A stretch of 59,532 nt of DNA, the filler included, from Platydemus manokwari (Eukaryota): the NCBI GenBank assembly GCA_037951405.1. It is 5 parts of 5 records of this genome, joined end to end, with 100 filler letters (N's around TTAATTAATTAA, not from the genome) between each part and the next. Parts side by side here need not be neighbours in the genome. Positions count along the whole stretch, not along the records: positions 1 to 17,911 come from JBBMOY010666652.1; 4 more parts are not named here. One strand, given 5' to 3'. Below are positions 3,132-17,911 of this stretch, piece by piece. The stretch's first letter is position 1. Each line of letters starts with the position of its first letter. A program made the translations under genes and the position numbers. A model generated the notes under the pieces. The model did no database searches, was not told the origin of the DNA, and saw nothing but the letters and a program-made list of their open reading frames with translations.

Positions 3132-4004
3132 ATGAATGACTGTAAATCTTTAAGGGTTTTGTTTCTCGGAGCAGGAAAAACTGGTAAAACGAGTATAATA
3201 AAACGATTTCTGACAAATGTATTCGATGATGTTTACCATCCAACAGTCGAAGATATTTTCCGAAGGGAATTCTTGGTGAGAAGATGCATTATTGATATCG
3301 AAATGCTGGATACTGGGGGGTTTTATAATTTCACTGGTATGAGAAAAATCTATATCAAAACATCTGTGGCATTTGTGTTGGTGTTTTCACAGGATTCTCA
3401 TTTGAGTTTTGAGATGTGTACGAACTTGTTTAATGAACTCAAACAGGAGAGAGGCGATGAATTATTTTCAATTCCGATTGTTATAGTGTGTAATAAATCC
3501 GATACTGTCAAAACGGAGATCGGTGAAGTGGAAATCATGGATTGGCTCATCAAATCCCAATTGAAACCGTCGCAATTCGTCTATTGTTCAGCGAAAAACA
3601 ATGACAACATTGTCGATGTTTTTGAGAGTTTGTGGATTCAGAATTTCAACAGCGAAAATCCATTAATGTTTATCGATTTAGGATCGGATAAAAAACCACC
3701 CCGACGATTTAGTTCCAGTGAAATGAATAAATTGTTTTTCTGTTCCACTTCGAAAACCACTCAAAACGATCCATTCACATCGGAAATGTCAGTGATTAAT
3801 ATTCCTCTTCCGTGTAAGAACGACGATTCTTGTTGGACCCATTCACCAGTCAAATCATTAGATAACCACTTGATATCTTGTACACCAAATGAATCCAAAA
3901 CATCAAACAACCTGTTCCGAACCACGGATAAATTGAAACGCCATTCAACTAAAAGCAAAAGAAAGCATCGGAATCAAGTCAAGCTTAATTGCATAATTTC
4001 GTGA
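3132..4004 (+). CDS. Ras-family small GTPase, RASD (Dexras1/Rhes) or Di-Ras-like, single coding exon
   Basis: 290-aa ORF with G1 GAGKTGKTS, effector YHPTVED, G3 DTGG, G4 NKSD, G5 SAK, a long C-terminal extension, a polybasic tract (KLKRHSTKSKRKHR) and CaaX CIIS (RASD1 ends CVIS). Confidence 0.9.
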   Translation: MNDCKSLRVLFLGAGKTGKTSIIKRFLTNVFDDVYHPTVEDIFRREFLVRRCIIDIEMLDTGGFYNFTGMRKIYIKTSVAFVLVFSQDSHLSFEMCTNLFNELKQERGDELFSIPIVIVCNKSDTVKTEIGEVEIMDWLIKSQLKPSQFVYCSAKNNDNIVDVFESLWIQNFNSENPLMFIDLGSDKKPPRRFSSSEMNKLFFCSTSKTTQNDPFTSEMSVINIPLPCKNDDSCWTHSPVKSLDNHLISCTPNESKTSNNLFRTTDKLKRHSTKSKRKHRNQVKLNCIIS

Positions 4005-13336: not shown

Positions 13337-13695
13337 TCAATTCTTAATTCCAACAGACAGTCCAATAATCAAAGCGATAACAGCCAACACACCAATTACG
13401 ATTCCAATAATACACAATTTCTTCCTCATTGCCGATCTCTTGTAAGTGACAGCTTTGTCCAATTCTTTATCTGCCAAATCCACTTTCACATAGGCATCTT
13501 CGACATTCATTTCTATTCGATCCACCATTTCCCCTTGCTCATAAACCATGTTATTCAATTTCAAGAACATATCTTCCAATTGAATGACGTCTTTGGTGAG
13601 TTTTTCCATTTGTTTTTGTTCTTCAATCGCCATTTTCATTTCAGTATCATTAATGGCCATTTGTTCACTGTGACGCATGGTGTTTTCATCGAAAT
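13337..13695 (-). CDS. Syntaxin (Qa-SNARE): terminal exon encoding SNARE motif and C-terminal transmembrane anchor
   Basis: Translation ...LEDMFLKLNNMVYEQGEMVDRIEMNVEDA...KAVTYKRSAMRKKLCIIGIVIGVLAVIALIIGLSVG has the Qa zero-layer Q (EQG), the DRIExNV motif, a basic linker and a TM helix. The frame stays open upstream of the ATG to an AG at 13696-13697 (phase 1, xFDENTMRH). An in-frame TGA lies just beyond. Confidence 0.9.
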
Positions 13696-13749
13696 CTATT
13701 TTTCAAATATTTGTCATAAATCGATTAAATAAATCAATAATAATTAACA

Positions 13750-15200: not shown

Positions 15201-15206
15201 TTTATT
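15201..15206 (-). terminator. Polyadenylation signal of the putative prohormone gene
   Basis: AATAAA on the minus strand 22 nt downstream of the TGA at 15229-15231. Confidence 0.5.
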
Positions 15207-15228: not shown

Positions 15229-15449
15229 TCATTTTCCAAATCCACTGTCCCACATTTGATGTTTCGGCAGAAGATTTCCTTCCTCAAGAAGTTTCTTGTA
15301 ATAGTCGTTCATTGAATCCTTTTTCACTTCTCTTTTACCGTAACTGCTGAACCATCCTTGTCGTAAATTTGGATCTCCTTTCATTTGTCGTAGAACTTTG
15401 AGATAATATTGGATAAGTTGTCTTGATATATTGTTGCTATTATCTGATG
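15229..15449 (-). CDS. Terminal exon of a putative neuropeptide/peptide-hormone precursor
   Basis: Acceptor tttatag (AG at 15450-15451), phase-1 frame: SDNSNNISRQLIQYYLKVLRQMKGDPNLRQGWFSSYGKREVKKDSMNDYYKKLLEEGNLLPKHQMWDSGFGK*. Contains GKR and terminal GK amidation/cleavage signals and KK sites. AATAAA follows at 15201-15206. Signal-peptide exon not located. Confidence 0.75.
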
Positions 15450-15749
15450 CTATAAATAGTATAAATAAATTTATTTATCGATTTTAACAAAATAATTTCA
15501 ATATTTTGGATAAACGAATTTTTGTAAGAAATCATAATCTATTTTATGTTAGGTTGTATTTATATTTCAGATTAATAAAATTCACAAGATAACAAATCAA
15601 ATCTTAAGGAAGTATTATAGATTAGGAAATAAATGCTTGAAGTAGTAGACATGAAATTTGCTTTATTATTTAATAATGGGGAGATACTCCCCATTTATAT
15701 TATATCACCATTTATATTAATATCTCTCAATACCATTGTGAGAATATCA

Positions 15750-15900
15750 AATTGAATTTAATTTGAATTAGTATAGAATTTAATTTATATTAAATTAAGT
15801 TTTATATTGAATTTAATGTTGTATTGAATTTGATTTAAAATTGAATTTAATTCTATAAAGAATTTAAATTTTCATTGAATTTAAATTTGGTATTAAATTT
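15750..15900 (+). repeat. Degenerate ~17-bp minisatellite (TGAATTTAATTTNNTAT-like)
   Basis: About 8 consecutive units, e.g. tgaatttaatgttgtat / tgaatttgatttaaaat / tgaatttaattctataa. Confidence 0.6.
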
Positions 15901-16413
15901 TATTTATTTGTTTAAACATAATTTGAATGTCGAGTTTTTTCAGTTCGTTTTCGATGCCTATTTTATAAAATGATGTAAGAATACCAGTTGCGCTTATTAT
16001 TTCCAGTTCACAACTGCTTCATTATGCACACGATTTGAATGTACGACCCATCGGTCTAGAAGGTTCGTTCTTTAATAATTTTATCATTTTCTACTTTTGC
16101 AGAAAAAGCGAAAGCCACATTTCAGCTACAGGTTTTCCTCATTTCTTGGAAAGTTGATGCGAGAACTTATTATATTTTATTCTTATTCTCATAGGGCTTT
16201 TACGAAGAATTTTAACGACTTTGTTTTATCAAAAGTTTCTGCTAATGAATTGACTGACAAATTAAAAAATTCGAATTCTTATTTGGTTTCCGCCATTCTT
16301 TAAGAATACAAGTTCTTTTAACAAGATATAATAAAAATAATCAAGATAATAATAATATATTCAATCATAAATAATGATCATAAATAATAATAAAGCTAAT
16401 AGCATCGATATCA

Positions 16414-16415
<2 letters not shown>

Positions 16416-16456
<41 letters not shown>
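16416..16456. repeat. (ATT)n microsatellite
   Basis: Direct reading. Confidence 0.9.
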
Positions 16457-17837
16457 TTATTCATTGAATTGGATATTCTCATCTGGCCAAGTACGAATGG
16501 TTTGAAAATGAAAACATGATTTATCAAAACAGATTTAGTGATCCAGCTACATTTTGCTGAAATTTAATTTTTTCTGAAATTTCAAATCTCAAAAATGCCA
16601 TTATGTCACTTCACGAAACTATATTTAACTTATTGGCTTTGTCTAAGCCAATGTAATCCTGGAAATATTTTTATCGCAATGCATTCTCACCATTATTATT
16701 TCGTGATGACAAAAACATATTGCAATGCACACCGAACCATTTCTAATTTTATTTTTAACATAAAATTTCAAATATAAAAGATCTTATGCAAATGGCTCAT
16801 TTGGGAATTCACATGTTATTCGTGTTATAAATCCATACAAATCCGTACAAATCCGTACAAATCGGAAAGCAATCTTTTTACTGCAATGATGGGATCATAG
16901 AAGTACAATTTTTTTCTGTCTCAACTTAAAAACTTCTCAAATTCCAGCACAAATCCCACCGTGAATTTGAAAATTTTTTGAAATTTTAAAAATTTGTTTT
17001 TTTTCTTTATAAAATTAAATTTACGATTTTAAATCATTTAAGATCTCATTCAGAAATTTGTAAATTTTGACCAATCACTAATTTTCAATCACTTGGCACA
17101 ATTCAAACTCCAATTGCCGTTTTCCAAGTCCAAAATACAAAATCAACCTTAACCTCATTAAATCAATTTTTGCTCAAACAATCCTCATCATAATAATTCA
17201 TTAAATCGAACATACGGTGGCAATTGCTTATCATCAATTAATGAACTCGGTAAGTGGATTCTGATTTAATTGAATGATTTGAAGAAATTAAAGTAATTTT
17301 CAACATTTTTTTTTAAATAATTCCATTAATGCCATTAACAAAGGCAGATTTTTATCATTTCTTTTTTTATTCCAATTAAAATAAGTCAAATCGGATGTAA
17401 TTAGATCGATTTTAATTACTTAAAAAATCAATAAACCAATTTCGAAATGTATGATTATGAAATGTATTCTCTCCGATTGAAAGTCATGTCTTTTCCGTAA
17501 CCTTTAAACTTGACTGGATTTTTATTTTATTATTTAATTAATGGGCCCAGTTTCGATTATCATTAAGAATTTTAATTTTCTAGTCTTTTAAATATGATTA
17601 TAATCAATAATTAAAATTGCATAAAAATTATTTGATTAAATTTCTTTTCATTATTTTCAAAATAAATATAAATTTAATTCGGGATTAAATATAAATTTAG
17701 TCGGACTTATCTATATTTATTTATTTTTATTAAATTTAATTATTTTTTATTTTAAATATTATGGTTGATTTATTATTGTTGTTGATATACCCGTCTGTTT
17801 TAATTTATTAATAAATTTGAATAATTAGAGAATGTAA

Positions 17838-17839
<2 letters not shown>

Positions 17840-17911
<72 letters not shown>
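17840..17911. repeat. (ATT)n microsatellite running into assembly gap
   Basis: Direct reading. Confidence 0.95.

What the first reader, a model, noticed from the sequence alone, without database searches (positions are those of the whole stretch)
15229..15449. Hidden neuropeptide prohormone exon with two related QxWxSx[Y/F]-amide peptides
Seen: a 72-codon minus-strand exon absent from the ORF track, with an acceptor, stop and AATAAA. It holds an internal duplication, YYLKVLRQMKGDPNLRQGWFSSY-GKR and YYKKLLEEGNLLPKHQMWDSGF-GK*, with consensus YYxKxL...P..QxWxSx[YF]GK. Established: G-KR and C-terminal G-K are convertase/carboxypeptidase/PAM amidation signals, and an N-terminal Q can cyclise to pyroglutamate. 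Inference: the products are either long helical amidated peptides (e.g. DSMNDYY...WDSGF-NH2) or short ones such as pQGWFSSY-NH2. I do not recognise the motif among the flatworm npp/spp/NPY families I know, so it may be an undescribed peptide signalling family.
Basis: partly seen in the sequence, partly recalled or inferred. Interest (0 to 1): 0.8.

Follow-up and report, generated by a model that had tools for sequence, protein, structure and literature searches.

The report
Uncatalogued planarian amidated-peptide precursor exon
This is a real protein-coding last exon of a small planarian gene family whose invariant ending (HQMWDSGF-Gly-Lys/Arg-stop) looks like an undescribed amidated signalling peptide, but neither a signal peptide nor a transcript could be shown.

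Summary

It is not a chance ORF. The same 911-Mb planarian genome holds exactly three loci ending HQMWDSGFG[K/R]-stop. All three have a phase-1 acceptor 58-72 codons before the stop and a dibasic site 32-34 residues before the C-terminus. Synonymous sites are saturated while dN/dS is 0.12-0.27. The nine invariant HQMWDSGFG codons differ only synonymously.

The conserved product is therefore a roughly 32-aa peptide ending ...HQMWDSGF-NH2. It has a glycine amide donor only in this copy.

No match was found in Pfam, 5.8 billion clustered proteins, a profile search of 1.84 billion representatives, or the Schmidtea mediterranea prohormone catalogues. Similarity to planarian NPY is short and weak, and the family's defining features are absent.

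Still missing are the signal-peptide exon, RNA evidence and orthologues from other species.

Verdict: probably a new lineage-restricted prohormone family (about 0.6). Interest is moderate.

The parts
15229..15449 (-). Terminal coding exon: 2 bases of a split codon, 72 codons and the TGA stop
   Evidence: Translation. GC 35% against 17-18% in the flanks. Two paralogous exons in the same genome. dN/dS 0.12-0.27.
15450..15472 (-). Putative 3' splice site: AG at 15451-15450 after an A/T-rich, AG-free run, phase 1
   Evidence: Sequence. No other AG lies upstream as far as 15540. An in-frame stop at 15477-15475 and the lack of an ATG make splicing necessary. Both paralogues have an AG in the same phase. 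Use of the site in RNA is not shown.
15331..15408 (-). Unit 1, YYLKVLRQMKGDPNLRQGWFSSY followed by Gly-Lys-Arg: an internal duplicate of the C-terminal peptide, with an amidation signal only in this copy
   Evidence: Similar to unit 2 with p about 0.002 and to the C-terminal peptide of L002 with p about 0.0014. The paralogues end this region MKR or MKK without Gly.
15331..15336 (-). Lys38-Arg39 dibasic cleavage site. The dibasic site is present in all three paralogues (KR, KR, KK); K38 is invariant.
   Evidence: Alignment A1.
15238..15330 (-). Predicted main product EVKKDSMNDYYKKLLEEGNLLPKHQMWDSGF (31 aa, amidated after removal of Gly-Lys). It holds the conserved [FY]YK[KN]L motif.
   Evidence: Alignment A1. 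Purifying selection over the last 34 codons. The amidated product itself is inferred.
15238..15261 (-). Invariant octapeptide HQMWDSGF, the proposed receptor-binding C-terminus
   Evidence: Identical in all three paralogues with only synonymous codon differences. There are exactly 3 genome matches to W-D-S-G-F-G-basic-stop and 0 in the control.
15229..15237 (-). Gly71 (amide donor), Lys72 and the TGA stop
   Evidence: The paralogues have G-R-stop and G-K-stop.
15201..15206 (-). AATAAA polyadenylation-like hexamer, starting 23 nt after the stop
   Evidence: The paralogues have one at 31 and 68 nt. This is weak evidence in a genome this A/T-rich.

Best explanation
Window 15229-15449 (minus strand) is the last coding exon of a small gene for a secreted peptide precursor (prohormone). 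The gene belongs to a three-member family in this planarian genome. The proposed pathway has five steps, all inferred. (1) An upstream exon not yet found supplies the start codon and signal peptide, and the phase-1 intron sits near the signal-peptide cleavage region. (2) A prohormone convertase (PC2) cuts after the conserved dibasic site Lys38-Arg39. (3) Carboxypeptidase E trims the basic residues. (4) Peptidylglycine alpha-amidating monooxygenase converts the C-terminal Gly into an amide. (5) The main product is a peptide of about 31 aa with a helical N-terminal half and a flexible end, ...HQMWDSGF-NH2. Further cutting at the internal Lys-Lys could give an 18-aa form. It would act as a neuropeptide or hormone on an unidentified receptor, most likely a GPCR. 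In this copy alone, an internal duplication adds a second possible amidated peptide ending ...QGWFSSY-NH2. What is shown: the coding status, the paralogues, purifying selection focused on the C-terminus, and the conserved processing motifs. What is inferred: secretion, processing, amidation and signalling.
For: Three loci and no more end HQMWDSGFG[K/R]-stop. The protein search gave E 5e-4 and 0.02 and the profile search E 1e-27 to 1e-30. The DNA pattern for W-D-S-G-F-G-basic-stop matches 3 times against 0 for the control in 911 Mb. Alignment A1 has 13 invariant columns: K38, Y50, K51, L53 and H63-G71. Over the last 34 codons pS is 0.64-0.74 (saturated) and pN 0.26-0.31, giving dN/dS 0.12-0.27 and Fisher p 0.0003-0.006. 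The nine invariant HQMWDSGFG codons differ only synonymously, and third positions change most. All three exons have an AG acceptor in phase 1, 58-72 codons before the stop. The split codon is NTT (hydrophobic) in two copies and NCA (Ser, Thr, Pro or Ala) here, which fits an intron inside or just after a signal peptide. All three have a dibasic site 32-34 residues before the end and Gly-basic-stop. Nucleotide similarity between the loci is confined to the coding end, so this is not a transposon. Exon GC is twice that of the flanks. The genome is a planarian and encodes canonical prohormones: its npy-1 orthologue is 79% identical to S. mediterranea NPY-1. Planarian PC2, CPE and PHM are established (bioRxiv 10.64898/2026.10.10.758126; PMC2953531). 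One paralogue (L003) has an unspliced ORF with a plausible 29-aa leader, MTQFFAFLKRFISNYIKMAFLVLLTKTFG|MEFD. Soft lead: the language-model neighbours of the exon below score 0.9 include PDH, DH31, NPFF, pancreatic-hormone, CCK and QRFP precursor clusters.
Against: No convincing exon with a start codon and signal peptide was found in the 2.4 kb upstream in the window, or in the 3.0 and 2.1 kb upstream of the paralogues. The paralogues share no upstream coding segment. There is no RNA evidence. No orthologue from any other species was found, so conservation rests on within-genome paralogues only. The AlphaFold model has low confidence, mean pLDDT 56. AATAAA and hydrophobic reading frames are common by chance in DNA this A/T-rich.
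Confidence: 0.62

Rival explanations
1. It is the C-terminal exon of a non-secreted or larger multi-exon protein. The conserved HQMWDSGFG[K/R] end would then be a C-terminal interaction or targeting motif, and the basic pairs and glycine would be incidental.
For: No signal peptide or first exon was found. The contigs are short, so upstream exons could lie beyond them. Lysine-rich sequence produces KK and KR by chance.
Against: No conserved upstream coding segment is shared by the three loci within 2-3 kb. There is no Pfam domain. Conservation peaks at the last 9-10 residues and ends exactly at Gly-basic-stop in all three, with a dibasic site at a constant distance. That is the typical layout of amidated peptides. 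A possible alternative last exon of the neighbouring syntaxin gene is unlikely, because the paralogue contigs carry no syntaxin-like sequence.
Confidence: 0.2
2. It is a strongly diverged member of the NPY/NPF superfamily. This would be a prohormone as in the best explanation, descended from planarian npy genes, that kept the helix motif DPxxLxx[YF]xKKL and replaced the RPRF-amide end.
For: There is local similarity to the npy-1 orthologue of the same genome: DPRALQDFYKKL against DPESLRNYIKKL. Smith-Waterman gives p about 0.001 for two paralogues and 0.007 for the window copy against shuffles. Peptide length is similar (31-34 aa against 28-39 aa) and planarian npy genes are a large expanded family (PMC2953531 supplement). 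A pancreatic-hormone cluster is among the language-model neighbours at 0.85.
Against: Profile-profile comparison gives probability 4% and P 0.0098 over 15 columns only. There is no PF00159 hit, whereas S. mediterranea NPY-1 carries it. The defining RxRF/Y-amide end is absent. The npy genes of this genome break at an intron after GRPR, but here the peptide runs uninterrupted to the stop. The precursor layout also differs: the peptide sits at the extreme C-terminus behind a propeptide instead of directly after the signal peptide. The comparison was chosen after seeing the similarity and 16 pairs were tested.
Confidence: 0.1
3. It is a secreted peptide with a non-neuronal role, such as an antimicrobial, mucus or gland peptide made by secretory cells, and not a neuropeptide.
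For: The predicted amphipathic, lysine-rich helices and C-terminal amidation are also common in antimicrobial peptides. Lineage-restricted multi-copy families are typical of such effectors.
Against: An octapeptide kept invariant across paralogues whose synonymous sites are saturated fits recognition by a specific receptor better than membrane activity. Antimicrobial peptide families usually diversify in the mature peptide.
Confidence: 0.06
4. It is a chance open frame or a dead pseudogene relic.
For: An 81-codon open frame is expected a few times in 18 kb of six-frame A/T-rich sequence, by my estimate from base composition. There is no RNA evidence.
Against: Three loci share the frame, the stop position, the acceptor phase and an invariant C-terminus. 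dN/dS is well below 1 and all three frames are intact.
Confidence: 0.02

Closest known systems
Planarian peptide prohormones of the npp, spp and npy classes (Collins et al. 2010, PMC2953531; SPP-20, Ong et al. 2016, PMC4825013)
   Same: It is a small gene in an A/T-rich planarian genome. The peptide is flanked by dibasic sites and ends Gly-basic, and conservation is concentrated in the mature peptide. The organism has the processing machinery. Some catalogued precursors also end directly in Gly or Gly-Arg at the stop, such as npy-7 (...RPRYG) and spp-11 (...YIRFGR).
   Different: None of the catalogued sequences held as text contains WDSGF, SGFG, GFGK, GFGR or GWFSSY. The signal peptide is not in the same exon, whereas it is for the npy genes of this genome. 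The product is long (about 31 aa) with a C-terminal motif I could not match to any described one.
NPY/NPF family (Pfam PF00159 Hormone_3), especially Smed NPY-1 (E3T7T7_SCHMD)
   Same: It is an amidated peptide of about 30-36 aa with a central amphipathic helix. It shares a local motif D-P-x-x-L-x-[ND]-[YF]-x-K-K-L. In NPY-1 the KK inside this motif is a detected cleavage site, so the same could hold here.
   Different: There is no RxRF/Y-amide, no PF00159 match, and no intron in the C-terminal motif. About 19 residues follow KKL instead of 12. The position in the precursor differs, and profile-profile probability is only 4%.
Gastrin/CCK-type peptides (C-terminal ...GWMDF-NH2)
   Same: From my own knowledge only: an amidated C-terminus with Trp, an acidic residue and a terminal Phe. 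A cholecystokinin cluster appears among the language-model neighbours at 0.85.
   Different: The order and spacing of residues differ (MWDSGF against GWMDF). There is no sulfatable Tyr next to the motif. Known spiralian CCK/sulfakinin-type peptides end in RF- or RW-amide. No alignment-based support was obtained. This is a resemblance, not a membership claim.

Membership tests
Amidated peptide prohormone (generic class) | N-terminal signal peptide on the full-length precursor | tested here: inconclusive
   Scans for an ATG, hydrophobic core and GT donor found nothing convincing upstream of any of the three loci. The contigs end 2-3 kb upstream. L003 has a possible unspliced 29-aa leader. No SignalP tool or cDNA was available.
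Amidated peptide prohormone (generic class) | Mature peptide bounded by mono- or dibasic convertase sites | tested here: met
   KR, KR and KK lie 32-34 residues before the C-terminus in all three paralogues, and K38 is invariant.
Amidated peptide prohormone (generic class) | C-terminal Gly followed by basic residue(s) or the stop, as the amide donor | tested here: met
   G-K-stop, G-R-stop and G-K-stop, with Gly71 invariant.
Amidated peptide prohormone (generic class) | Selective constraint concentrated on the mature peptide rather than the spacer regions | tested here: met
   In the last 10 codons pN is 0-0.06 against pS 0.33-1.0. Over the whole exon pN is 0.35-0.45. The N-terminal parts are not significantly alignable.
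Amidated peptide prohormone (generic class) | Expression in neurons or endocrine cells, and detection of the processed peptide | not testable with these tools
No peptidomics data were available for this species.
NPY/NPF (PF00159) | C-terminal RxRF-amide or RxRY-amide | tested here: not met
   The C-terminus is HQMWDSGF-Gly in all three. The npy genes of the same genome have GRPR(F/Y).
NPY/NPF (PF00159) | Significant match to the family profile | tested here: not met
   There is no PF00159 hit at E up to 1 for any of the three. hhalign against an alignment of planarian NPY sequences gives probability 4.2%.
NPY/NPF (PF00159) | Intron interrupting the C-terminal RxRF motif. This is recalled as conserved in the family, and was observed here in the npy loci of this genome. 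| tested here: not met
   The npy open frames of this genome run into non-coding sequence right after GRPR. In the new family the peptide, Gly-basic and the stop are contiguous.
Catalogued S. mediterranea prohormones (51 genes plus spp-20) | Sequence identity or orthology to a listed precursor | tested here: not met
   Motif strings are absent from the supplements of PMC2953531 and PMC4825013 and from the full text of 8.4 million papers. As a positive control, the protein database does hold Smed NPY-1, but nothing matches this family.

The most novel reading that the evidence does not exclude
These three genes define a previously undescribed flatworm neuropeptide family, the HQMWDSGF-amides: peptides of about 31-34 aa that are unrelated or only remotely related to NPY/NPF and signal through a still orphan planarian GPCR. 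The window copy has begun to evolve a second amidated product (...QGWFSSY-NH2) by internal duplication.
Probability: 0.5. Interest if true: 0.55.

Novelty: new member of a known kind. Interest (0 to 1): 0.45.

Why it matters
Planarian neuropeptides control germline development, feeding, locomotion and, according to recent work, regeneration. As of late 2026, functional screens still work from the 2010 and 2016 catalogues. Hundreds of planarian GPCRs remain orphan (PMC4862687 abstract).

A conserved three-gene family missed by those catalogues would add candidate ligands for receptor deorphanisation and RNAi screens. It also shows that prohormone terminal exons can be recovered from raw genome sequence using paralogue conservation alone.

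The gain is incremental. The kind of molecule is well known, and the family may be restricted to triclads.

Tried and rejected
RNA evidence:
- The run search found one holder, not recorded as RNA.

Homologue searches:
- The word-indexed protein search found nothing.
- The profile search of 1.84 billion representatives gave three hits: a ribosomal-protein L5-like sequence and two long repeat-containing proteins. All matched only the lysine-rich helix and not the C-terminal motif, so I rejected them as spurious.
- A scan of metagenome contigs with a degenerate pattern for HQMWDSGFG found nothing.
- Exact-product look-ups found nothing.
- Pfam found nothing and Rfam found nothing around the locus.

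First exon:
- Three scans for an ATG, hydrophobic core and donor were run. The best hit in the window is MIEYIIIILIIFIIS|T-GTTAAAAG at 16368-16322. It lies in microsatellite-like A/T-rich sequence with a poor donor, so I did not accept it.
- The GC-richer stretch 15972-16300 has no signal-like ORF on the minus strand.
- Comparison of the translated upstream regions of the paralogues found only low-complexity matches.

Other checks:
- A looser genome pattern, W-x-S-x-[FY]-G-K-R, gave 84 matches against 58 in the control. The WFSSFGKR hits lie in frames full of stops.
- The weak extra profile hits L004 and L008 are unrelated.
- The AlphaFold model has low confidence and I did not take it to a fold search.
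- One literature query was wasted on matches to sGFAP.

Full report
**Observation**

- An AG sits at 15451-15450 behind an A/T-rich run that contains no other AG. The stop TGA is at 15231-15229, and an AATAAA starts 23 nt after it.
- The frame is open only back to 15474 and has no ATG before Met22. A mechanical ORF list therefore shows only a 51-aa piece.
- The exon stands out by composition: 35.3% GC against 18.4% and 17.4% in the flanks.
- The two halves of the exon resemble each other more than shuffled controls do. The local alignment score is 37 against 18.8 +/- 4.1, p about 0.002.

**Organism**

The window is contig C666652 of a 911-Mb assembly in about 2 million contigs.
- The genome encodes an orthologue of Schmidtea mediterranea npy-1. 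It is 93% identical over the mature part and 79% over 58 aa including the signal peptide. UniProt E3T7T7_SCHMD is the single database hit.
- It also encodes several other npy-like exons.
- It is therefore a triclad planarian close to, but not identical with, the S. mediterranea reference.

**The exon is a real gene: three paralogues**

A six-frame search of the same genome found two further loci, on contigs C407222 and C1145538, whose open frames end in the same way:
- Window copy: ...NDYYKKLLEEGNLLPKHQMWDSGFGK-stop
- C407222: ...QDFYKKLVDEANKSIINRHQMWDSGFGR-stop
- C1145538: ...KNFYKNLIAQGKKARYHRHQMWDSGFGK-stop

A degenerate DNA pattern for W-D-S-G-F-G-basic-stop matches exactly these three places in the genome. 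The reversed control pattern matches none.

The alignment (A1) has 13 invariant columns: K38, Y50, K51, L53 and the block H63-G71.

The copies are old.
- Overall amino-acid identity is 33-41%.
- Synonymous differences are saturated (pS 0.64-0.79).
- Over the last 34 codons dN/dS is 0.12-0.27, and synonymous changes are in excess with Fisher p 0.0003-0.006.
- The nine invariant HQMWDSGFG codons differ only at synonymous positions: CAT/CAC, CAA/CAG, TTT/TTC, GGA/GGC.

Nucleotide similarity between the loci is limited to the coding end, so they are not copies of a mobile element. The chance-ORF and pseudogene readings are effectively excluded.

**Gene structure**

All three exons begin at an AG in phase 1, with two bases of a split codon followed by whole codons. 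The acceptor lies 58-72 codons before the stop.
- In two copies the split codon is NTT, which can only be Phe, Leu, Ile or Val. It is followed by ...ECLMCRA|APS or ...LLTKTFG|MEF.
- In the window copy it is NCA (Ser, Thr, Pro or Ala), followed by SDNS.
- This pattern is what an intron inside or just after a signal peptide would give. That is an inference.

I could not find the first exon.
- Scans for ATG-initiated hydrophobic segments with a donor in the right phase found nothing convincing. They covered 2.4 kb upstream in the window (to the contig end at a microsatellite) and 3.0 and 2.1 kb upstream of the paralogues.
- The translated upstream regions share nothing but low-complexity sequence.
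- One paralogue (L003) has an uninterrupted ORF starting MTQFFAFLKRFISNYIKMAFLVLLTKTFG|MEFD. This could be a 29-aa leader.
- Between the exon and the GC-richer stretch at 15972-16300 lies the end of a high-copy repeat.

**What the exon encodes**

In all three genes a dibasic site (KR, KR, KK) lies 32-34 residues before the C-terminus, and the protein ends Gly-Lys/Arg-stop.
- From established knowledge of prohormone processing, these are the signals for convertase, carboxypeptidase E and amidating monooxygenase. All three enzymes are described in planarians.
- The predicted common product is a 31-33-aa peptide ending ...HQMWDSGF-NH2.
- The conserved Lys-Lys in YKKL could be a further cleavage site, as was detected for the KK in NYIKKL of Smed NPY-1.

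- In the window gene the region before the dibasic site ends QGWFSSY-Gly-Lys-Arg. It is significantly similar to the C-terminal peptide family, with p 0.0014-0.014 against the paralogues' peptides.
- In the paralogues the corresponding region ends NVYGNNMKR and NWYNRMKK, without a glycine donor.
- So ...QGWFSSY-NH2 is at best a recent, gene-specific addition.

The AlphaFold model has low confidence. It predicts helices up to residue 55 and a disordered C-terminal tail.

**Comparison with what is known**

Database searches:
- There is no Pfam match.
- No protein shares words with the exon among 5.8 billion clusters.
- The profile search of 1.84 billion representatives gave only three spurious matches to the lysine-rich helix.
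- As a positive control, the same database returns Smed NPY-1 for this genome's npy-1 exon and nothing else. Catalogued S. mediterranea prohormones are therefore present. Planarian coverage is otherwise thin, so the absence of orthologues says little about conservation.

Literature:
- The motif strings are absent from the supplements that list all 51 S. mediterranea prohormones and their detected peptides (PMC2953531).
- They are absent from the 2016 peptidomics supplements (PMC4825013) and from the searchable full-text library.
- A 2026 preprint still defines "all known" planarian neuropeptides by those two papers.
- The flatworm catalogues of McVeigh 2009 and Koziol 2016 were not among the texts I could search.

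The closest resemblance is to planarian NPY.
- The helix segment DPRALQDFYKKL resembles DPESLRNYIKKL of npy-1, with p about 0.001 against shuffles.
- Profile-profile comparison gives only 4% probability over 15 columns.
- The RxRF/Y-amide end is missing and there is no PF00159 match.
- The intron that interrupts the C-terminal motif in this genome's npy genes is absent here.
- I therefore do not file the family under NPY/NPF. A remote common origin remains possible, at about 10%.

Language-model neighbours of the exon below the reliability threshold include several neuropeptide-precursor clusters. I treat this as a lead only.

**Verdict**

The best explanation is the terminal exon of a peptide prohormone from an uncatalogued, probably lineage-restricted three-gene family, whose conserved product ends HQMWDSGF-NH2 (confidence about 0.6).

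The main rival, at about 0.2, is that the exon ends a non-secreted or larger protein. It stays open because no signal peptide, transcript or orthologue from another species could be shown.

This is a new member of a known kind and of moderate interest. It offers concrete candidate ligands for planarian GPCR deorphanisation but no new principle.

Noticed in passing
window 3132-4004 (+): An uninterrupted 290-aa ORF encodes a Ras-family small GTPase (Pfam Ras, E 5e-27). It has a long Ser/Lys-rich C-terminal extension ending CIIS, a CAAX-type prenylation box. No identical product is on record.
   Followed up: partly
window 13337-13702 (-): This is the terminal exon of a syntaxin-like t-SNARE: a SNARE domain (Pfam E 1e-12) followed by a transmembrane anchor. 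It lies on the same strand, 1.5 kb downstream of the peptide exon. Its upstream exons were not identified, so the peptide gene could lie inside or next to the syntaxin gene.
   Followed up: partly
window about 15900-15971: This is the end of a high-copy dispersed repeat, with more than 500 first-look candidates and 86-96% identity over about 60 nt. It sits between the peptide exon and the unique GC-richer stretch at 15972-16300. Short tandem aaattcaat-like units follow at 15750-15890.
   Followed up: no
window 15443-15538 (-): The frame just upstream of the acceptor reads INLFILFIA|SDNS, which is hydrophobic and ends in Ala. An ATG ORF (MISYKNSFIQNIEIILLKS...) overlaps it in the neighbouring frame. 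A single-base indel would fuse them into a leader of about 31 aa, similar in length to the possible leader of paralogue L003. This may be chance in A/T-rich DNA or an assembly error. It is unresolved.
   Followed up: partly
window 16411-16527 and 17803-17911: These are (AAT/ATT)n microsatellites. The second one ends the contig, which is probably why the assembly breaks 2.4 kb upstream of the exon.
   Followed up: no
L012 (G000:C1440891, 344-nt contig): This NPY-type exon (MQKLVL...NELRQYLKELNEYYAIMGRPR) has amino-acid usage less A/T-driven than the other npy loci. It could be a further paralogue or DNA from another organism in the sample.
   Followed up: no
I left these places out of all later searches.
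   Followed up: no
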